Source: Fimbriosthenelais zetlandica (lineage: Eukaryota). Taken from it: DNA of 64,000 bases. The number at the start of each line of letters is the position of its first letter. The first letter of the stretch is position 1. The DNA lies in assembly GCA_977030845.1 (NCBI GenBank), contig OZ365109.1, positions 52,638,001-52,702,000 of the forward strand, read 5' to 3'. The notes beneath the pieces are model-generated. The model saw only the letters and a list, made by a program, of their open reading frames with translations. It was not told the origin of the DNA and made no database searches. A program made the translations under genes and the position numbers. Below are positions 4,271 through 60,924 of this stretch, piece by piece.

Positions 4271-7200
4271 CTGCACTGACAAGAATGAGAGACCTTATCA
4301 TGTTTTTTACTCCCACTCACTGCCTTTCTCAATAAAGCTGCTTCACTTCACCCCAACTCACAAAAAACAATCCCCTCACAATACACTAGCAATGTACAGA
4401 CATTTGTCCATGGTCTAGGAATCCTTTGTGATGCAATGAAATTGAAAATCCAATTTTATCCTCTTTTCTGGTCCCCCACCTTGAACATGACAGTCTATGG
4501 ATGGTTATTATGCACGTCAGTTGCCCACAGAGGGAAGAAGCTACTACCCTGCACAGGTTTCATAATGCCAGATTGGGCAGCATTTGGAGGTGGAGTTTTT
4601 TCTTGCTTGAGCCAGGATAGAGATTGTGTAGCTGGCTTTGGTTAGGGCTGACAACTCGATCCCTCTACATCCTGGTGCTTCTGGTGACAGTCAACAACCA
4701 GGTGTGCATTGGATCCAAACAAACCTTTGCTTTAAAGCAGCTCCTTACCTCTATCACACAGGTATTCCCTAACCAGAGTTAGTGTATGCATGTAGGTATC
4801 TCTAAATGTCCTCTAATCATACTGTCAGTCCGGATCAAGTATTCACCATCAAAGTATATACACCAGATTACGACCAACATGCACGCTTGTTATTCTCCCA
4901 AAAGCGTGCTGCATGTGCTGCTGCAAAACCAGCCGACCCACCTTCCCTCCTCCTCCCTTCTACCACATGTGTATGATGAGGGACTGGGGAACCACGCCCA
5001 CCTGCCAATCAACCTCCCCTTCATTTCCATATACCTTGCTCTCTTAACTTTCGCGGGGCTTCAGGCCAGGTGAGAATAAGAGCAATGAAGATGAGCACAT
5101 AACAGCACTGTTTTATATCTTTTCTATATACAGCCACACCTTATTGTAAACATTTATATGGTTTGTAGATGTTCCCACATGGTCTAGCCCTGCCAGCACC
5201 TATCTCTACAACCCCATGCCCTTATCTCCAGCAGTGCCATGTACTGAGCAGAGGGCCATTTTCTTATGCATGCAAACTCGCCTCTCACCTGACATTGTTC
5301 ACGTCTAGACGTGGTGCTCCCTTCTTTAACCCATGATCTTGTCTTCATAATACCACCATAAACCAACGTCATAAAAAATTGCTAATGATCAATGAAGAAA
5401 CACTAAGCTACTTGTTTGTCAATTTTAATATAAATTTAGGCTAAATTTGGGGCCAATTGAATCATAAATCAACATCATAAGAAAATTGCTAAGGAGGATT
5501 CACTGAACCTTCTTTTTGTCAATTTTCTTTAGTGCCATTGAAACATACTTTTGCAGTGATACCTTTGAAGAATATCGTTTTGCAAAGTTTTCTAAGCGTG
5601 TTGGTTAGGACCCTTATTCCCCCTTCTCGGAGACATTAACCAGGCAGAATGGAACAACATTCCAGCAACAGTTCAATAATTACAAGGTATATAGGGGGAG
5701 GTACTATGTGTAGCGAAACATTATACTGGTCTCTATTCTCTACACAGCTTTCTAGATTTCTCTGAAACAGATCTTTTTCATATGGCCCAGTGCAGCTTTT
5801 GGTACAGCATGTCATATACATTGTACATGCATATATGTAAGCAATGCTCTTTTCTTTCTGCAAATGACTGTCGATGTTACTATGTAATAAGCAAATGACA
5901 TATTAAAGAGCAACTGCTTATACTTTTCTCAAGACAAACAGAATGTTATCAATATCACTAAGGCCTGAATGAGTGAACCATTGTCTGAAACACATACAGT
6001 AACAAGCTTTCATATAAATATTGAACATACGATGTTTAACAAGTTTTAGTGCTTTTATGTACACATAATATTTAGGAATAAATGTGCTAATGGCCAATTA
6101 GAGATCAGGACCTGTTTATGTTTCTGTGGATCACAGGAAACTGGTTTATTCCGAAACCATTAAAAAGTTTGTTCGTGATTCCAGTTTCCTGAACTCTTCC
6201 TGCTCACGGTGGTTAGCATGGTATTCAACACATACTAATGTTCCGCCTCTGTCCCGTAAAAGTAACATACTTACTCCTGTCTACAGTTCATGGAATAGGA
6301 ATATTCAAAAAAAGATATCTGGATATCAAAAACAGATATCTGGATCATATTTACAACTATTCTGACTAATGAAATTTATGGCAATTCTCAGCACCATGGT
6401 AATGTCTATAATTAATTTTCATGTGGATTCAGGGCAGCTTAATAATGTTATCGCGACCTCTTGCCACTTGTACGCTCCACTAGTTATGTTTGGTACCTTT
6501 TTACCTAGATCTGGCATGCTCATGAATTTAACCATTCACACAAAGAATTCATCTCCATTTCTAGCCTCCCGTACTACTCCCTTCCCATATAGACACATAT
6601 ATAAATGTTAAACATACATTTAACCACTCTAGGACATCCCTCCCTATCCCTCTGCTTATTTCATAGAGCATTTTTTTGGCCTTGAACATTCATTGAGTGA
6701 CCTATAATCTTTACCCCTTACATATGAAATCCACCAGCCTAGTCACGATCTTCCCCTTAACAAAGGTGTTCCTGCCCGGGTTACCTCCACGGCACCCACA
6801 CGACGGAAATATCAGTTATGAGGCCATAAGGGTATATCATGCATATCAATAGAGTCCCAACACATATAGGTCATTGTTTCAACTCCTTTCATCCTAAATA
6901 TCTTCAACTATTCACCCAGTCATTTTTCACTTTTACAATTCAAAATGTATTAATTGAATAATTCTAATTATATACGTTTCAGACATTTGTCACTTGTAGG
7001 CAGAACTCCTCAAAGAAAGACATTAATTAAAATCAATTAATTCCCTCCTCATTTAATCTTGAATTACCATTTTAGTCAGGGAGACTATTAAGTTCCGTGG
7101 GAAAATGATGATTAAAATATCCCACCTATATAGAAATGTTCTATAGACCCTCAGGAACAAGAAAAACCATGTTGTCAATCTTGAATTTGCTGCAGAGGGC

Positions 7201-7339
7201 GGCCATCTTGGATTTCCATGGCAACAGTGCATTTTTTAAAGAAATTATAAAAAAAGGATGTTTTAGGGCATTACTTGATCAGAAATTGTCATAGAAAGCT
7301 AAAATTTGGTATGTTGGTGTATTATGCCAAGTTGCATTT

Positions 7340-8830
7340 TGGGATGGAATTTAGTTGACCTTTGCCAAGGTCAAGGTCATTTGAAGTGACCTTGAACCTC
7401 TAAATTTGAGCAAAAAACCATATAGGACCTTATTCCAATACCATCCATTGCCTCATTATTGTATAGAATAGTTAAAAGTTGGTATATTCATGTGTAGTAA
7501 TATAGGAGCTTTGGATGGGGAGGTATTATGTGGTAGTTGGACTGGTTGTTACCATGGTAACCAACACTTTATTAAAAAAATCATTTATAACAGACTGACA
7601 CCCGTGAAATATGTTTTACTCGAGTTTTAGGAGTTTAAATAGAGATAGAGACTTTATATTTGGTAGAGTGATGTATCATACCGAGATGCATTCTGGCATA
7701 TAATTTGGTTGACCTTTGCCAAGGTCAAGGTCATTTGACGTGACCTTGAATCCCTAAATTTGAGCAAGAAACCACATTGGACCTTATTCCAATACCATCC
7801 ATTGCCTCATTATTGTATAGAATATTTAATGTTGGTGTATTCCTGTGTAGTAATATAGACGCTTTGGTTGGCGAGGTATTATTTGGTAGTTTGAGTGGTT
7901 GTTGCCATGGTAACCGGCACTTGATGAAAAAAATCATTTATACCAGCCTTACTTACCCCGGTGAAACATTTATTTTCTGAGTTTTAGGAGTTTAAATAGA
8001 GATAGGGACTTTATATTTGGTAGGTTGATGTATCATGCCGAGATGCATTTTGGGATATAATTTGGTTGACCTTTGCCAAGGTCAAGGTCATGTTACGTGA
8101 CCTTGAAACCCTAAATTTGAGCAAGAAACCACATCAGACCTTATTCCAATACCATCCATTGCCTCATTATTGTATAGAATAGTTAAAAGTTGGTGTATTT
8201 CTGTGTAGTAATATAGAAGCTTTGGTTGGTAAGGTATATGTGGTAGTTTGAGTGGTTGTTGCTATGGTAACCGGTACTTTATGAAAAAAAAATCATTTAT
8301 ACCAGACTGACCCCGGTGAAACATTTATTTCCTGAGTTTTAGGAGTTTAAATAGAGATAGAGACTTTATATTTGGTAGGTTGATGTATCATGCCGAGATG
8401 CATTCTGGGATATAATTTGGTTGACCTTTACCAAGGTCAAGGTCAATTGACGTGACCTTGAAACCATAAATTTGTGCAACAAAAGACCGTATTCCTATAT
8501 TAACCATACTCTCATTATTTCATAGAATAGCAAATAATTGCTGTATTTATGTGATTTAATATCTATAGGGTCTTTGGAATGCCAGGTATTATGGGATAGT
8601 TTGAGTGGTTGTTGTCATGGTAACCATTTATATCATACTGGCCCTGGTGGAACCTCAATTTTCGAGTTTAAGGAGTTAAAATATAAATAATGACTTCATA
8701 TTTTGTAGCTTGTTGTATCATGACGACGTGCATTCTGCGATGTGATTTGCTTTAAGGTCATATGAGGTGATCTTGAACCCATAAATTTCAACAAAAAATA
8801 TCAAAAATACCTTTACCAAGATGATTCATT
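7340..8830 (+). repeat. Left-arm tandem array of ~355-bp units (4 clear plus 1 degenerate)
   Basis: Anchor GTTGACCTTT(G/A)CCAAGGTCAAGGTCA at 7354, 7708, 8065 and 8420 (spacing 354-357), degenerate near 8750. Confidence 0.95.
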
Positions 8831-8890
8831 ACCTAATTATTAAATATAAAGAAAAATTGTATGCATGTGAAACCCCGTAGGATCTTTGGA

Positions 8891-11200
8891 ATACCAGGTA
8901 TTAGGGTATTGAGCTGGAAGGGCCAGATCTTGAACTGAAAAGAGCAGATGTTGAGCTGAAAGGGTCGATAATGGACTCGAGGGGTCCTATATAGGATTGC
9001 AAGGGTCCAATATTGGATTGAAAACGTCAGATCATGGGCAGGAATGTCCTTATCTTGAGCTGCAAGGGTCATATGTTGAGCAGATGTTGAGCTGGGATAG
9101 TCTGATATTGGACTGGAAGGGACAGATATAGAGCTGGAAGGGCCAGATGTTGGCCAGGAAGAGCCTTATTTGGAGCTGGAAGCTCTATCTTGAGCTGAAA
9201 AGACCTGATGTTGAGCTGCAAGGGCCAGGTAACTATTACTGCCATATTAGGCCAGTCAAAAACACCCCTATCCCCCAAAATTGCAAGAAATTATTTTATG
9301 GTTGTTTTTGGAAGAACCACATATGGGGACCATTGTGCTAAGAGTTCACCAAAAGTGGACCACCACAGGTGGTCTAAATTCAAGCCAATACGGTTTTTCA
9401 TCATTTTGGAATGGGTCTTGAGGGTGTCAAATTGGTTACCAGGGAGATATGAAATTCCTGGTCAAGATATGTCGACCCACCTCAATATTTGGCCCTTACA
9501 GCTCAAGATATTATATACATGTATATGTACATGTCCAAAACATGGCCCTTCCTGCCCAGTATATGACCTTTCCCACTTAAGATTTGGGACTTTTGGTCCT
9601 ATACCTAACCTTTCCAGCTCAACATCTAGTCCTTCCACCTCAATATCTGGCCCTTCCATCTTGAGACCCTTCCTCAGTTCCAGTCAACTTCCTGGCCAAG
9701 ATATGCCCTTATTCCTGTCCTATACCTGACATTCCAGCTGAAGACCTGGCCCTTTCTGTCCTATATGACCCTTCCTATTCAAGATATGGCCCTTCCAACT
9801 CAGGATAGGGCCCTTCCTGTCTAAAATCTGGCCCTTCCTGCTCAACATCTGGACCTTCAATCATACTATCTTTCTGCCTAAGACATATGGCCCTTCCACC
9901 AGAATATCTGGTCCATCCAACTCAAGATATACTCTGAGAGTTCAGGATAGGCCCTTCATGTCCAAGATCTGGCCCTTCCTGCTCTCACGATATGACCCTT
10001 CCAGGTTACGACATGTCCCCTACTGCCAAAGATATGGCACAACATATGGCTCTTCAAGCTCAACATCTGGTTCTTCCATCATAATATATGGTCCTTTCAT
10101 CATATCTGGCCCTTCCCGCCCAAGATATGACCCTTCCAGGTCAGATTAGGGCCCTTACTGCTCTTACTGTTCAGGATGGACCAGATATTGAGCGCAAGGG
10201 GCAGATATTGGGCAAGAAGGATATGTCATTGAGCTGAAAGGATATGTCATGAAAGGTGAAAGGAGATGGAGTGTTCTATATATATTACATTATGTAATTC
10301 CAGAATAGGAATATTTAAGTAAAGAAATAGGATGAGATCACTTCCAACACTTTCAATAATTGAGGAGAGGCATATATATATATATTTACACCATATTACT
10401 CAAATATAATTTGACTACTCAAATATAATTTGAACCTTTTCAATGGATTTGTCATCCTCAAATGGACCCGAATTGCAGTCAAAATCTTTAGACAGATACA
10501 TGCATATGAAAAAGTGCAAATATGGCCCTTCTGCCAAAGATTTGTCCCTTCCACCTGCCCATCCTATCCAAGCTCTGACCCTTTCAGATCAAGATACGAC
10601 CCTTACTGCCCAAGATCTGGCCAAGATTCCAGCTCAATATCTGTCCCCTCCTGTCAAATATCTGATCTTTCCAATTGAATATCTGATCTTGTTAGCTCAA
10701 TATATTAGCCTTCCAGCTCATGATAAGGCCCGTTGTGCCCAAGATCTGCCCCATACAGCTTACAATCTGGCCCTGTCTGCCAAATATGACCCTTCCAGGT
10801 CAAAATCTGCTCTTTTCAGCTTAACATATGGCCTTTCCAGTTTAAAATAAGGTCCTTCCTGTCCAAGATTTGCACATTCCAACTCAATATGTGGCCCTTC
10901 CAGTCCAATATCGGACATATCCAGCTCAACATCTGCCCTTTCCAGCCACAGATATGGCCCTTGCAGCTCGAAATATGGCCTTTGCAGCTCTAGATGAGGC
11001 CCTTATTGCTCACCATCTGGTCCTTCCTATGCAATACCTGGCCCTGCTCGCCTAGTACCCTTCGCCCAGTACCCTTTGACTATTCCTGTCAAAGATCTGG
11101 CCGTTCCAGCTCAGGAACTGTCCAATACATGACCCTTGTAGTTCAAGATCTGACCATTGCAGCTCAAGATCTGGCCCTTCCTGCTCAAGATCTATCCCAT
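8891..11200. repeat. Core of degenerate 21-bp repeats (consensus about GGGCCAGATATTGAGCTGGAA) in four blocks
   Basis: Forward about 8891-9232, reverse about 9461-10165, forward about 10175-10260, reverse about 10520-11200, with unique spacers at 9233-9460 and 10260-10520. Confidence 0.9.
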
Positions 11201-11299
11201 ATAATACAATGTACCTGGCATTCCAAAGATCCTACGGGGTACACAGACATACAATGTTTCTTTTCTTTAAAATTATATTTAATAATTATACAATGGTTA

Positions 11300-12720
11300 A
11301 GATTGGAAAAGGGATTTTGTGATATTTTATGTTGAAATTTATGGGTTCATGATCACCACATATCACCACATATCATATGACAAAATATAAAGTCTATAAT
11401 CTATAACTATTGTCACGTCTTAAACTCAAAAATTGATATAAACTGATGGTTACCATGGCAACAACCACTCAAACTACCACATATAACTCGCCAATCAAAG
11501 CTTCTATATTACTACACAGGAATACACCAACTTTTAACTATTCTATACAATAATGAGGCAATGGATGGTATTGGAATAAGGTCTGATGTGGTTTCTTGCT
11601 CAAATTTAGGGTTTCAAGGTCACGTAACATGACCTTGACCTTGGCAAAGGTTAACCAAATTATATCCCAGAATGCATCTCGGCATGATACATCAACCTAC
11701 CTAATATAAAGTCTCTATCTCTATTTAAACTCCTAAAACTCAGGAAATAAATGTTTCACCGGGGTCAGTCTGGCATAAATGATTGTTTTTTCATAAAGTA
11801 CCGGTTACCATAGCAACAACCACTCAAACTACCACATATACCTTACCAACCAAAGCTTCTATATTACTACACAGAAATACACCAACTTTTAACTATTCTA
11901 TACAATAATGAGGCAATGGATGGTATTGGAATAAGGTCTGATGTGGTTTCTTGCTCAAATTTAGGGTTTCAAGGTCACGTAACATGACCTTGACCTTGGC
12001 AAAGGTCAACCAAAATATATCCCAAAATGCATCTCGGCATGATACATCAACCTACCAAATATAAAGTCTCTATCTTTATTTAAACTCCCTAAACTCAGAA
12101 AATAAATGTTTCACCGGGGTAAGTAAGCCTGGTATAAATGATTTTTTTCATAAAGTGCCGGTTACCATGGCAACAACCACTCAAACTACCAAATAATACC
12201 TCACCAACCAAAGCTTCTATATTACTACACATGAATACACCAAGTTTTAACTATACTATACAATGGATGGTATTGGAATAAGATCTTATATGGTTTTTTG
12301 CTCAAATTTAGGGTTTCAAGGTCACGTAACATGACCTTGACCTTGGCAAAGGTCAACGAAATTATATCCCAGAATGCATCTCGGTATGATACATCAACCT
12401 ACCAAATATAAAGTCTCTATCTCTATTTAAACTCCTAAAACTCGAGTAAAACATGTTTCACGGGGGTCAGTCTGTTATAAAGGGTTTTTTTAATAAAGTG
12501 TTGGTTACCATGGTAACAACCAGTCCAACTACCACATAATACCTCCCCATCCAAAGCTCCTATATTAATACACATGAATATACCAACTTTTAACTATTCT
12601 GTACAATAATGAGGCAATGGATGGTGTTGGAATAAGGTCCTATATGGTTTTATGCTCAAATTTAGAGGTTCAAGGTCACTTTAAATGACCTTGACCTTGG
12701 CAAGGGTCAATTAAATTCCA
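11300..12720 (-). repeat. Right-arm tandem array of ~355-bp units (reverse orientation)
   Basis: TGACCTTGACCTTGGCAA anchors near 11630, 11985, 12332 and 12686, degenerate near 11340. Confidence 0.95.
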
Positions 12721-13310
12721 TCCCAAAATGCAACTTGGCATAATACACCAACATACCAAATTTTAGCTTTCTATGACAATTTCTGATCAAGTAATGCCCT
12801 AAAACATCCTTTTTTTATAATTTCTTTAAAAAATGCACTGTTGCCATGGAAATCCAAGATGGCCGCCCTCTGCAGCAAATTCAAGATTGACAACATGGTT
12901 TTTCTTGTTCCCGAGGGTCTATAGAACATTTCTATATAGGTGGGATATTTTAATCATCATTTTCCCACGGGACCCTAAAATTGTCTATTAGTCTCCCTGA
13001 CTATTTGTTTGATGTTGGTTTAATGAAATATTCATCAATGGCTAGGAGGGCAATTGGGTCAAACGCGGCTTCTCATGTGTTCTATTTAATGAATTTTCAT
13101 TTAATATGCAAAACTGCAACTATACCTTGAAACTCTATTAATTTATTTGCAAATAATAAAAAAGACGGTGCTAATAAATTGAGAAATTTCGATTAAATTC
13201 CAAATATATATCAGAAGCTGAATAGGTAATTGTCAGATAAGACATTAAGAGATGGTCATGACTGCATCAGATAGCAGTTGTATAATGTTGGTTTGATAAA
13301 AGTTGGCTGG

Positions 13311-58046: not shown

Positions 58047-60529
58047 TAAGACGGTGAACATTGAGCACAAACATGCACACACAGTTTAGTTGGAAGTACC
58101 CCATGGATTATATTGGTTGTGTTCGAGAACCGTCGTCCTAGTAGTAAATAGTAGTTAAATATTAACAGTTTTATTTCGTCAATTTTTCATCTTTTGCTTC
58201 TGATAAATTTCTTTAAAATGGCATAGGATCCTTTATAAGCAATGTTTAAATCATTTCACGCGGAAAAAATACAACGTCAATGGGGAGATTATTGAGAAAT
58301 CAGCATGGAAAGACGTCTACGTGTTTGAGTCTTTTTCCTTCTTAGCGTGTGGCCCTGATTAGGGACTGGTATACCTTGCAGGCCTACAGAGGCCTAACTG
58401 GGGCCGATTTGACTAGAATTACAGGTTTTTGTTTAGTTCATTACATCACCATTGTTATAAAATGACAGACAATTCTATTTCCACATGAGGTAACACTGTA
58501 ATTGGAAGAAGTCGGAGTCGGAGCTCTCTTCTTTATACACGGTTGCTGAAGCGAAAAAATGTTACCTGGTTTATTTCGACATTCGAGTTACATAACTAAC
58601 ACCTCACCTTAAGTAGTCTGTGGGAAAATTTAATTTTTACCTCGGTACTACAAAGATCTCCTACTGCCAACTCCCTTCCATATTAATCATCGAGTTAATT
58701 CTTTGGGGAAATGAGGTTTTATTCCCATTCTTATATACACATTTGTAAGATTTTGTCGTCAAACAAGATCCAAACTGACAGACTTATTTAAACCTCTTTC
58801 ATGTGATTCCAAATACATGTAAGAAGTGCACCCGATCCACACCCCACTAATAACAGGGCCTACTTCTTACACCTAGTTCTTACAAATCTAACGCTTGGCT
58901 GCCACCCGTAAAGCAACAGATTAAATGGAGATGCTTGATTTGGTATAAGTAAAAATAAACTCTGCCTTTCACACAGCCAATGTAGGAGAGGCCAGGCTGT
59001 ATGAATCAATTGTAGGCATGGAAAGCCCCATTCACAACAAACCCGTACACAAAAGACGAGGGTTTAACATTCCTCCTGTTGTGAGCGGGGGGACTTGAGC
59101 TTCCTCAGAATCTAAACCAGCGGGAGATGGGGAATGCTCCAACTCATGTACATGGAGGGAGAGACAAATTTACCTTCATGGGTAAGAAGGGTGTCCACAG
59201 ACTCAAGTGATATTTATGTCAATATGAATGGATTTTGACATTCAGCCAAGGTGGGCGTTTGTGAAATAAAACCATGGGAGAGGGGATAATTATCCGCGAT
59301 ATGAGTGAACACCTTGCCTGACTTTAATAGGGTTTACACTCCATACATTTGCCACAACCTTGAGCAAATGTCTGTTAAACATTGTCCTTGCAATATTTAT
59401 GCCTATAATCATTTTAAAACTTTTAAATCTTGTTTTGTACCAGTAGATTTTACAATTTCAACCTGCCAATTTCGCCCCCTATGTTATTATTTTCTACTAT
59501 CACAATGTATAGATTTCTTGAGATTCAGATTTCTGTGAAAGAAAATAAGGTGGATACAACTCCATCTATGGAGTGTGATAATGAACACTCATCGAAAAGA
59601 AGTTCAAGTAAAATCAAACGTTTAAGTTATAACACAAGCCAGTTCAAAATAAATGTCTACAAAATTGCCCCCTGGCTGTATGTATTTCTGTGGGCTGAGT
59701 TATTCTTGATTTGTTGACGGACCAGTGAAAGAAGATTTAAAATGTGCCTCATGGGTCCATTGGGGTATTGTTACCAATTATTTAGATGCCATTATTCACG
59801 GACCATAATAAAAGAGAGATGTGGGAACATAATCTTGAATTGATCAGTGGAATGCAGGACAAGATGCCGCCGATAGGTTTCAGGTGTGAAGGGAACACTT
59901 GTACCATTTGAATATGTTTAGAACAATCGAAATTGTTCTCATGATAGAACAGGAGGTCGCCACTGACCTGGGGCCATCTTACCAGAGAGAGATAAAGAAT
60001 AACTATTCCAACCTCGGGCCATCCTTTATTACCTGCCAAAAGGGCCTTAAATAGTGCAGGATATTCTATATCGGGGTCCTCAGTTGGAATTCAGGGGAGG
60101 TCTAAAATACATTTTACCTGTCTTACCGGTAACGAGTTTTTTGTCTGTGCAGTGTCAAAATGAAAGGAACTAGGCAAGTATAATGACCCAGGGCTAGGTA
60201 ACACCTATCCATTTTTTCATGAACCACATATTTTCAGTCTCAATGACTCATCCAAACCCTCACCGCAGAACCCCACAAACGATGGTTTACATCTTTAAGA
60301 ATTCAATGTTTGGACCCGTATTTTTTGGTTTAATTTTACAATAAATTTACCTTGATATTATTGATATTTTAACATAATTTAATTTTATCAAGTATTAAAC
60401 TCAAGAATTTATGGGTGCAGTTGACTTCAACAGTAACTTGATTAATATTCACACAATTGTCATGTAACAAAAACAGTGAATACACACATGAAATTCCAAA
60501 ATACAAATAATTAAAAAAGATATATTTAC

Positions 60530-60924
60530 CTGACTTGACCATCGTTCATATCCTTGACGTCAATGTCGTTAATCTCCGTTATTTGATCACCATATTTAAA
60601 CCGGCCGTTGAGCTCGGCCAGAGAGCCAGGCAGTATACCTGTGATAGCCACATAATAATCCTCCTCCAGGGAGGTTTGATAAGATCCAGGTAACGATAAT
60701 CCCCTCTGATCCCTAATCTCAGGGCGCTCCTCCAGGCCCACAATGATCCCAAGATGCTGGAGGTTGGACTCCTCCTGTAACTGGAATTCCTCTCTGAACA
60801 ATCTCCCGGTCCTGGGAGGTTTAGGAGGGGGTTTTGTTTTACCCCCTCTGGATCTTCCAATGGGGGATATCATCAGGTTTTCCTCTCCATATGTTAATGC
60901 GGGTACATACTGATTTTCTTCCAT
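60530..60924 (-). CDS. PDZD2: PDZD2/IL16-family multi-PDZ protein, coding exon 1 (start codon, most of PDZ1)
   Basis: ATG at 60924 in strong context (gagaaaATGg), in-frame stop about 15 nt upstream. Encodes MEENQYV...HLGIIVG...VAITGILPGSLAELNGRFKYGDQITEINDIDVKDMNDGQV. Donor AG|gtaaat at 60529, phase 2, matching the next exon. Confidence 0.9.

What the first reader, a model, noticed from the sequence alone, without database searches (positions are those of the whole stretch)
7073..13003. 5.9-kb three-tier foldback element with no coding capacity, inside an intron
Seen: a near-complete palindrome. From each end inward it has ~270 bp of unique TIR, then 4-5 tandem ~355-bp units, then arrays of 21-bp units, with only two ~230-260-bp unique spacers in the middle. 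Known: Drosophila FB and sea-urchin TU elements have modular inverted arms, but those arms are built from short (about 10-31 bp) repeats. Inference: this long-unit/short-unit hierarchy looks like a distinct, possibly undescribed foldback family mobilised in trans.
Basis: partly seen in the sequence, partly recalled or inferred. Interest (0 to 1): 0.75.

Follow-up and report, generated by a model that had tools for sequence, protein, structure and literature searches.

The report
Young non-coding foldback Academ-type transposon
This 5.9-kb stretch is one of about forty almost identical copies of a gene-less "foldback" jumping element; its repeat-built inverted arms match those of a single 11.3-kb partner that encodes an Academ-type transposase fused to a flap nuclease, so it is a well-preserved, recently active example of a known kind of element.

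Summary
The structure is real and its ends are exactly as reported (7073 and 13003). It is a mobile element. The genome holds 40 exact left tips and 43 exact right tips, which pair into 38 complete copies. All 20 copies inspected have a perfect 3-bp A/T-rich target duplication, and twelve standard copies are 99.5-99.97% identical.

- Only the outer 1,555 bp on each side is a good palindrome. The 2.8-kb centre is asymmetric.
- The "unique" tip is a diverged 355-bp unit.
- The 21-bp repeat is a genome-wide family (about 14,500 matches), not private to the element.
- Intron location could not be tested.

A partner exists. An 11,309-bp copy on another chromosome has the same tips, a 3-bp duplication and six 355-bp units. 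It carries a 1,538-aa ORF whose models show a DDE/RNase-H-like transposase core (P element, Hermes) and a C-terminal FEN1/XPG/Exo1-type nuclease. With the 3-bp duplication, this matches the AcademX lineage.

Long tandem units in foldback arms are already known (Tetris about 220 bp, Galileo about 210 bp). I class it as a new member of known kinds. It is of moderate interest as a very young pair of autonomous and non-autonomous elements.

The parts
7070..7072 (.). Left copy of the 3-bp target-site duplication (TTT)
   Evidence: Read directly. The same 3 bases follow the right tip. 20 of 20 inspected copies have perfect 3-bp duplications.
7073..8627 (+). Left arm. It holds the tip TAGTCAGGGAGACTA (a 5-bp mini-palindrome, TAGTC/GACTA), a diverged terminal unit, and tandem 355-bp units with anchor motifs at 7544, 7897, 8254 and 8607.
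   Evidence: The terminal 268 bp is 100% identical in at least 28 other loci.
8628..8903 (.). Inner left segment without repeats, weakly mirrored by 11195-11445 (74 nt at 81% complementarity)
   Evidence: (I19)
8904..9226 (+). Short 21-bp array in the GGAAGGG orientation, 12 matches
   Evidence: (D6)
9227..9449 (.). Spacer 1 (about 223 bp). The 21-bp arrays switch orientation here, about 700 bp left of the geometric centre.
   Evidence: GC-skew sign change
9450..10150 (+). 21-bp array block A, CCCTTCC orientation
   Evidence: (D1, D5)
10151..10576 (.). Spacer 2 (about 426 bp). In the genome it is found essentially only inside copies of this family.
   Evidence: 40 scored hits, 90-100% identical, at positions that fall inside paired termini
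10577..11194 (+). 21-bp array block B, CCCTTCC orientation
11195..11445 (.). Inner right segment without repeats, weak mirror of 8628-8903
   Evidence: (I19)
11446..13003 (-). Right arm: 355-bp tandem units (TRF 11448-12761), a diverged terminal unit and the tip. It differs from the left tip by a small indel at bases 16-40.
   Evidence: The right-tip 31-mer is found 43 times in the genome.
13004..13006 (.). Right copy of the 3-bp target-site duplication (TTT)

Best explanation
Window 7073-13003 is a non-autonomous, foldback-type deletion/replacement derivative of an AcademX-like cut-and-paste DNA transposon.

Its two 1.55-kb arms (tip plus about 4.4 tandem 355-bp units) are the cis-acting ends. 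They are shared with an 11,309-bp partner at G000:C13:34487582-34498890. The partner encodes one large protein that has a DDE/RNase-H-like transposase core and a C-terminal FEN1/XPG-type nuclease, and ends in a Cys-rich tail.

Shown:
- exact ends, 3-bp target duplications, copy number and 99.7% identity between copies;
- shared arms and the protein folds;
- a second, truncated locus with the same arm-ORF linkage.

Inferred:
- The partner's protein, or an intact allele of it, binds repeated sites in the 355-bp units. The most conserved block in the unit is a cluster of four AGGTCA/TGACCT half-sites.
- It synapses the two tips, cuts at TAGTC..., and inserts with a 3-bp stagger into C-N-WWW-G-like targets. 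The nuclease domain would process the second strand.
- The 2.8-kb centre is passenger DNA built from a genome-wide 21-bp repeat and replaces the transposase gene.
- The family expanded very recently, from one master whose arms had already diverged by 4-6%.
For: Mobility:
- Flanks diverge exactly at the tip in 30 loci.
- 20 of 20 copies have perfect 3-bp duplications, 90% A/T.
- There are 40 exact left tips and 43 exact right tips, with 0 in the reversed-pattern controls. They pair into 38 elements, 18 of them 5,929-5,941 bp.
- Twelve copies are 99.46-99.97% identical, and 105 of 120 variable sites are singletons.

Partner:
- L043 has the same terminal 268 bp at 100% identity, six 355-bp units and a 1,538-aa ORF.
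- Its right tip lies 11,309 bp away and is flanked by the same AAA as the left tip.
- A second locus (C40, L029) is collinear from the arm into the ORF's 3' end at 99.3% identity, with different flanks.

Protein:
- D108, D281 and E532 are invariant across 24 homologues.
- The core model has pLDDT 79.6. Its best structural matches are P element transposase (Z 9.0, 332 residues aligned), Hermes (Z 8.3), ISCth4 and integrases.
- The C-terminal model has pLDDT 81.9. Foldseek matches Exo1, T5 FEN, FEN-1 and Rad2 at E down to 3e-5 with probability 1.0.
- VIA-align gives Z 9.2-12.7 for 17 FEN/XPG/Exo1/Xrn1/GEN1 chains, then drops to 7.2.

Literature: AcademX makes 3- or 4-bp duplications and is associated with a nuclease, whereas AcademH makes 9-10-bp duplications and carries a helicase (PMC10045372, citing Kojima 2020).
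Against: - No reference Academ transposase or profile could be compared directly. Pfam gives only a sub-threshold DUF6589 hit (20-23 bits against a cut-off of 27).
- In the only full-length copy, the first ~74 codons, which are homologous to the N-terminus of relatives, lie in a different reading frame from the 1,538-aa ORF. That copy may therefore be defective, or the assembly may carry an error there.
- The non-autonomous centre shares nothing with the partner's interior, so the two are linked only through the arms.
- No empty-site allele, expression data or binding data exist.
Confidence: 0.8

Rival explanations
1. The foldback family is mobilised by some other, unidentified transposase. 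On this reading the 1,538-aa ORF in the C13 and C40 copies is cargo, or an unrelated element that landed in a foldback copy and was then carried along.
For: - The ORF-bearing copies and the 5.9-kb copies share only the arms.
- The full-length ORF copy has a frame break near its N-terminus.
- Only one full and one truncated ORF copy are 100% identical.
Against: - The ORF is a DDE transposase plus nuclease of the type reported to make 3-4-bp duplications, which is what the family makes.
- No 21-bp arrays or central spacers flank the ORF, as a nested insertion into a standard copy would leave.
- The 11.3-kb unit has its own 3-bp duplication.
- Two loci show the same arm-ORF junction.
Confidence: 0.1
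2. It is mobilised by the P-superfamily (Galileo-like) transposon noted at the 3' end of this window. Galileo is the classic foldback-like element with repeat-bearing long TIRs.
For: Galileo TIRs carry about 210-bp tandem repeats.
Against: All 20 copies examined here, plus the partner, have 3-bp duplications, not 7-bp. The same tips flank a non-P, nuclease-fused transposase.
Confidence: 0.02
3. It is a non-mobile local inverted duplication of a satellite-bearing segment, or an assembly artefact.
For: Palindromes can arise through replication errors, and long inverted repeats are hard to assemble.
Against: 38 paired copies lie on 13 contigs, with unrelated flanks, exact ends and target duplications.
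Confidence: 0.01
4. The copy is an exapted host element: a hairpin-RNA or small-RNA source, or an enhancer cassette.
For: Each unit carries a near-palindrome containing GTTGCCATGGTAAC. A block with four AGGTCA/TGACCT half-sites is the best-conserved part of the unit, at 0.94-0.99 column identity.
Against: The motifs are carried by every copy of a young selfish family, so conservation among units is equally expected for transposase-binding sites. There is no expression or orthology evidence, and no runs were listed.
Confidence: 0.05

Closest known systems
Academ superfamily, AcademX lineage (Kapitonov & Jurka 2010; Kojima 2020, as cited in PMC10045372 and PMC5751038)
   Same: It makes 3-bp target duplications. 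One large protein combines a DDE/RNase-H-like transposase with an XPG/FEN-type nuclease, and there is no helicase. Relatives occur in marine invertebrates, and Academ is reported as expanded in bivalves (PMC10294476).
   Different: - The arms are kilobase-long and built of 355-bp tandem units, giving an 11.3-kb autonomous copy. Curated bivalve Academ elements average 5.6 kb.
- The dominant form is a non-coding foldback.
- I could not check whether such arms are already recorded for any Repbase Academ family.
Drosophila Foldback (FB) elements and sea-urchin TU elements
   Same: Long modular inverted arms made of tandem repeats, mostly non-coding copies, and variable numbers of repeat units between copies.
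   Different: From my own knowledge, FB arms use 10-31-bp repeats, FB makes 9-bp duplications, and its coding partner is MuDR-like. Here the arm units are 355 bp, the duplication is 3 bp, and the partner is Academ-like.
Galileo (P superfamily, Drosophila)
   Same: A foldback-like cut-and-paste element with TIRs up to about 1.2 kb holding about 210-bp tandem repeats. These repeats expand and contract and are proposed to hold secondary transposase-binding sites (PMC3573991; PMC3688188).
   Different: Galileo makes 7-bp duplications and has a THAP-type P transposase. Here the duplication is 3 bp, and the transposase is fused to a nuclease.
Tetris (Drosophila virilis foldback element)
   Same: A non-autonomous foldback element whose TIRs contain long (about 220-bp) tandem repeats, with a modular structure and rearranged forms (PMC4079207).
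   Different: The autonomous partner of Tetris is unknown, and its repeats have seeded kilobase satellite arrays. Here a partner is identified, and no long free 355-bp arrays appeared among the hits listed.

Membership tests
AcademX (Academ superfamily) | Target-site duplication of 3 or 4 bp | tested here: met
   20 of 20 copies have perfect 3-bp duplications. The 11.3-kb partner is flanked by AAA on both sides. The criterion is taken from PMC10045372.
AcademX (Academ superfamily) | DDE/RNase-H-like transposase domain | tested here: met
   D108, D281 and E532 are invariant in 24 sequences, on a strand, after a strand, and on a helix of the model respectively. Structural matches include P element transposase (Z 9.0), Hermes (Z 8.3), ISCth4, integrases and RAG1.
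AcademX (Academ superfamily) | XPG-type nuclease encoded with the transposase, and no helicase (which separates it from AcademH) | tested here: met
   For the C-terminal 459 aa, Foldseek matches Exo1, T5 FEN, FEN-1 and Rad2 at E down to 3e-5, and VIA-align gives Z up to 12.7, with human XPG at Z 9.9. No helicase family appears in the Pfam scans. That AcademX fuses the two in one protein is from my memory of Kojima 2020; one search says only that the nuclease goes with AcademX.
AcademX (Academ superfamily) | Sequence homology of the DDE core to reference Academ transposases (Repbase, or the Yuan & Wessler profile) | not testable with these tools
   No reference sequences or profile were available, and the Kojima 2020 and Yuan & Wessler 2011 papers are not held. 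There is only a sub-threshold DUF6589 hit. In 2017 Academ had no Pfam model and was most abundant in rust fungi, where DUF6589 is reported as enriched. That link is circumstantial.
Foldback-type elements (structural class) | Long inverted arms made of tandem repeats, with little or no coding capacity | tested here: met
   Arms of 1,555 bp at 93.5-96% complementarity, made of 355-bp units. No ORF with a domain, no Rfam family and no tRNA.
Drosophila FB / MuDR-related foldback | 9-bp target duplication (from my own knowledge) | tested here: not met
   3 bp in all copies.
Galileo / P superfamily | 7-bp target duplication | tested here: not met
   3 bp. The P element transposase is only a distant fold match, at 9% identity.
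PIF/Harbinger | 3-bp TWA target duplication and a DDE_Tnp_4-type transposase | tested here: not met
   Only 2 of 20 duplications are TTA or TAA. No such Pfam family appears in the partner ORF.
CACTA/EnSpm (CMC) | CACTA-type termini with a 3-bp duplication | tested here: not met
   The termini read TAGTCAGGG.... No Transposase_21/23/24 hit.

The most novel reading that the evidence does not exclude
This would be the first described Academ lineage that has converged on the foldback architecture, with kilobase arms of satellite-like 355-bp units. It is caught as a live pair: one autonomous copy and about forty 99.7%-identical non-coding copies. The fused FEN/XPG-type nuclease may act on hairpin or cruciform structures formed by the arms and the palindromic tips. 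That would make the poorly understood Academ transposition mechanism, and the reason foldback arms evolve repeatedly, directly testable.
Probability: 0.3. Interest if true: 0.6.

Novelty: new member of a known kind. Interest (0 to 1): 0.35.

Why it matters
Academ is one of the least characterised superfamilies of eukaryotic DNA transposons, and none of its members has been studied biochemically. This genome offers three things that together are suitable for excision, binding and nuclease assays:
- a very young family with exactly defined ends;
- a clear 3-bp target signature and a candidate autonomous copy;
- dozens of near-identical non-autonomous copies with repeat-number variants, and one copy whose centre is flipped.

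It also adds another superfamily to those in which foldback-like, repeat-armed ends have arisen (MuDR for FB, P for Galileo). That supports the idea that tandem subterminal repeats are selected as arrays of transposase-binding sites. For annotating this genome, it explains a recurrent 5.9-kb palindrome that could otherwise cause misassembly or be taken for a regulatory structure.

Tried and rejected
Instead, the partner's right end and duplication were located with exact-pattern searches.
- The look-up of sequencing runs listed no run. Read laying was therefore not used, and neither an empty-site allele, nor expression, nor the intron claim could be tested.
- Sequence searches of the ORF against Pfam and PDB gave nothing significant. 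The classification rests on folds.
- The word-based protein search returned only unnamed hypothetical proteins.
- Literature: Kojima 2020 and Yuan & Wessler 2011 are not held. Searching "Academ" with "foldback" was swamped by words such as "academic".
- Rejected origins: the centre deriving from the partner's interior (no similarity), a coding origin for the 21-bp arrays (no Pfam hit), Harbinger, CACTA, P and FB membership (see the membership tests), and local inverted duplication.
Full report

Yes, with corrections.
- The repeat finder reports inverted arms at 7092-7804/12261-12973 (713 nt, 96% complementary) and 7825-8483/11592-12250 (659 nt, 96%).
- A gapped BLAST of the element against its own reverse complement gives one anti-diagonal alignment, element positions 23-1555 against 5898-4374 (93.5%). 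Inside that there are only two weak pieces at 75-80%.
- TRF finds 3.3 copies (7304-8483, period 357) and 3.7 copies (11448-12761, period 355) of a long unit, plus many short 21-bp arrays between 9081 and 11193.
- So the three tiers exist, and the coordinates 7073 and 13003 are exact.

The palindrome covers only the outer 1,555 bp of each side.
- In the centre, 21-mers in the GGAAGGG orientation occupy about 0.32 kb (8904-9226, 12 matches).
- 21-mers in the CCCTTCC orientation occupy 9450-10150 and 10577-11194 (41 matches). Shuffles give 0.02 matches.
- The switch of orientation lies about 700 bp left of the geometric centre. The GC skew changes sign at the same place.

The "unique 270-bp TIR" is not unique. 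When the arms are cut at a 19-nt anchor motif that recurs every 343-357 bp, the terminal segment aligns with the inner units at 72-84% identity. Each arm is therefore a run of about 4.4 units that reaches the tip.

No coding capacity or RNA gene was found.
- The longest ORFs (173 and 135 aa) lie in the 21-bp arrays and have no Pfam match.
- Rfam and ARAGORN find nothing.

**2. Is it mobile?**

Yes.
- The terminal 268 bp finds 40 scored matches at 99-100% identity elsewhere in the 447-Mb genome.
- In 30 loci the flanks are unrelated right up to the base before TAGTCAGGGAGACTA.
- I fetched 10 kb for 20 loci. Nineteen contained the opposite tip, and all 19, like the window copy, are bracketed by a perfect 3-bp direct repeat.
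- The triplets are 90% A/T and contain no C. They are not restricted to TWA (2 of 20). The target shows a loose C-N-WWW-G pattern: C at position -2 in 13 of 20, and G just after the triplet in 11 of 20.
- Exact-pattern counts give 40 left tips and 43 right tips, with zero hits for the reversed controls. The coordinates pair into 38 complete elements on 13 contigs.
- 18 of these are 5,929-5,941 bp. The others range from 1,833 to 17,199 bp.
- Twelve standard-length copies are 99.46-99.97% identical (mean 99.73%), and 105 of 120 variable columns are singletons. This is a star-like pattern typical of one recent burst.
- The two arms of a copy differ by 4-6%, and that difference is inherited by all copies. 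The burst therefore came from a master whose arms had already diverged.

Length variants are mostly gains or losses of 355-bp units, or changes in the 21-bp arrays.
- A 1,833-bp mini-element keeps little more than the arms (L037).
- In one copy (C38, L032) the centre is inverted relative to the diagnostic tips. Recombination between inverted arms would produce this.

**3. The partner**

One fetched locus (L043) had no opposite tip within 10 kb. Instead it carries six 355-bp units followed by an intron-less 1,538-aa ORF on the opposite strand.
- The right-tip pattern search places its other end at C13:34498890, giving an 11,309-bp element.
- A longer pattern shows that the right flank begins with AAA, and the left flank ends with AAA. 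It therefore has its own 3-bp duplication.
- The same protein occurs at 100% identity (residues 806-1538) at C40, next to another exact left tip. That locus (L029) is collinear with L043 from the arm into the ORF's 3' end at 99.3%, has three fewer units, and has different flanks.
- The partner's interior has no 21-bp arrays and no similarity to the 5.9-kb element's centre. It is therefore not a standard foldback copy hit by another element.

**4. What the protein is**

Sequence methods say little. Pfam gives only a sub-threshold DUF6589 match and a weak CXC match, and PDB sequences give nothing.

The word-based search found 44 relatives. They are 35-63% identical apart from one outlier at 23%, and up to 1,636 aa long. 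All are unnamed, and they include proteins from sea anemone and coral assemblies. The ESM Atlas points to unnamed clusters from molluscs and echinoderms.

The central region (residues 330-1100):
- Aligned with 23 relatives, it has invariant D108, D281 and E532, among others.
- Its AlphaFold model (pLDDT 79.6, pTM 0.80) puts these on a beta strand, just after a beta strand, and on a helix. [quoted passage not shown]
- Foldseek's weak top hits are Hermes, RAG1 and P element transposases.
- The Foldseek-independent search gives P element transposase (Z 9.0, 332 aligned), Hermes (Z 8.3), ISCth4 (Z 7.9), retroviral integrases, Tn5 and RAG1.

The C-terminal 459 residues:
- The model (pLDDT 81.9) matches Exo1, T5 flap endonuclease, FEN-1, Rad2 and Xrn1 at Foldseek E down to 3e-5, probability 1.0.
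- VIA-align gives Z 9.2-12.7 for 17 FEN/XPG/Exo1/GEN1/Xrn chains, followed by a drop to 7.2.

The ORF is therefore a DDE transposase fused to an XPG/FEN-type nuclease, with a Cys-rich tail.

**5. Comparison with known families**

- PMC10045372, citing Kojima 2020, says that AcademH generates 9- or 10-bp duplications and AcademX 3- or 4-bp ones. It relates the difference to the helicase versus the nuclease they encode.
- From my own memory of Kojima 2020, AcademX families encode a single protein with a transposase and an XPG nuclease. That paper is not held here.
- Academ had no Pfam model in 2017 and is most abundant in rust fungi. DUF6589 is reported as enriched in rust fungi. This link is only circumstantial.
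- Academ is reported as strongly expanded in bivalves, with a mean curated length of 5.6 kb.
- Three testable defining features are met: the 3-bp duplication, the DDE core, and an XPG-type nuclease without a helicase. Direct homology to reference Academ sequences could not be tested.
- A first-stage note of this scan independently labelled the same 11,309-bp copy [quoted passage not shown] (s1-210771). I treat it as a lead that agrees with my own tests, not as evidence.
- Harbinger, CACTA, P/Galileo and FB memberships fail on duplication length, termini or protein (see the membership table).

**6. The claimed structural novelty**

- Tetris, a non-autonomous foldback element of Drosophila virilis, has about 220-bp tandem repeats in its TIRs.
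- Galileo subfamily F has about 210-bp tandem repeats in its TIRs. They expand and contract and are proposed to hold secondary transposase-binding sites.
- Long-unit arms are therefore known.

The 21-bp tier is not specific to the element.
- A 20-nt consensus with up to 2 mismatches matches 14,521 times in the genome (controls 0). Only about 9 matches per copy, or about 380 in all, would come from this family.
- The listed hits form many arrays elsewhere.

The best-conserved block of the 355-bp unit, a 24-mer with AGGTCA/TGACCT half-sites, occurs 745 times at up to 1 mismatch. About 340 are expected from the counted copies.
- The listing shows further foldback-like loci with the same units but other tips, for example C1:34366835-34372086. 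Exact 21-mers sometimes lie between their arms.
- The window copy therefore belongs to the youngest subfamily of a broader group.

**7. Mechanism**

Shown: the ends, the duplications, the burst, the shared arms and the protein folds.

Inferred:
- The transposase recognises repeated sites in the units. The AGGTCA cluster is the most conserved part, at 0.94-0.99 column identity.
- It cuts at the tips and integrates with a 3-bp stagger, and the nuclease domain handles the other strand.
- The tip itself is a 5-bp mini-palindrome (TAGTC-AGGGA-GACTA), which might matter for a structure-specific nuclease. This is speculation.

Caveat: in the only full-length copy, the ~74 N-terminal codons that match relatives (51% identity to P0001) are in a different frame from the 1,538-aa ORF. 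This copy may be defective, or the assembly may have an error there. The active source may be an allele that was not assembled.

**8. What could not be done**

- The intron claim is untested. Flanking ORFs have no domains, and no runs were listed.
- No empty-site test was possible.
- The partner's last 1.4 kb is unread.

**9. Verdict**

This is a real, very young, non-autonomous foldback-type element with an identified Academ(X)-like partner. The claims of a near-complete palindrome, of a distinct new foldback class and of an unprecedented repeat hierarchy do not hold. I class it as a new member of known kinds, of moderate interest.

Noticed in passing
Genome-wide, e.g. G000:C1:54697886-54698029, C10:43247287-43248058, C11:16060636-16061720: The 21-bp unit is a dispersed genome-wide tandem-repeat family. 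The consensus TGGCCCTTCCAGCTCAAGAT with up to 2 mismatches matches 14,521 times. That is far more than the ~380 expected from this transposon family. Its origin (another transposon or a minisatellite) is unknown.
   Followed up: partly
G000:C1:34366835-34372086, C1:51144153-51150839, C1:54926588-54933476, C10:4682028-4693200: Other foldback-like loci carry the same 355-bp-unit motif in inverted blocks but lack the exact tips of this subfamily. These look like older or sister subfamilies with 3 to 7 or more units per arm.
   Followed up: no
L032 (G000:C38:2283702-2289588): In one copy of 5,887 bp the central segment is inverted relative to the diagnostic left and right tips, and its right arm is 99.7% identical to the standard left arm. 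This suggests recombination or gene conversion between the inverted arms.
   Followed up: partly
L043:7124-7360 (minus strand), overlapping the ORF start at 7164: The N-terminal ~74 codons of the transposase, homologous to relatives and containing a CxxC motif, are out of frame with the 1,538-aa ORF in the only full-length copy. This is either a real frameshift or an assembly error.
   Followed up: partly
window 7073-7087 and 12989-13003: The 15-nt tip TAGTCAGGGAGACTA is itself a mini-palindrome, with a 5-bp stem and a 5-nt loop.
   Followed up: no
G000, 38 scored places, e.g. C29:14606845-14611488 and C21:2859851-2863303: The genome holds many paralogous intron-less ORFs of 1,100-1,600 aa that are 24-43% identical to the partner's protein (263 first-look candidates). 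Several Academ-like lineages therefore coexist.
   Followed up: no
G000:C27:7895226-7912424, C10:11643334-11653309, C1:31549233-31557204: Three copies with standard tips are much longer (17,199, 9,976 and 7,972 bp) but show no close match to the partner's ORF. They probably carry nested insertions or expanded arrays.
   Followed up: no
window 7544-7562, 7897-7915, 8254-8272, 8607-8625 and their mirror sites: Each unit starts with a near-palindrome containing GTTGCCATGGTAAC, which resembles an RFX X-box, as another note of the scan pointed out. The AGGTCA cluster about 165 bp further along the unit is better conserved among units.
   Followed up: partly
window 60526-60924 (minus strand): This ORF carries a PDZ domain (Pfam E 2e-7), probably an exon of a host gene. 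It is the only recognisable host coding signal I saw in the window.
   Followed up: no
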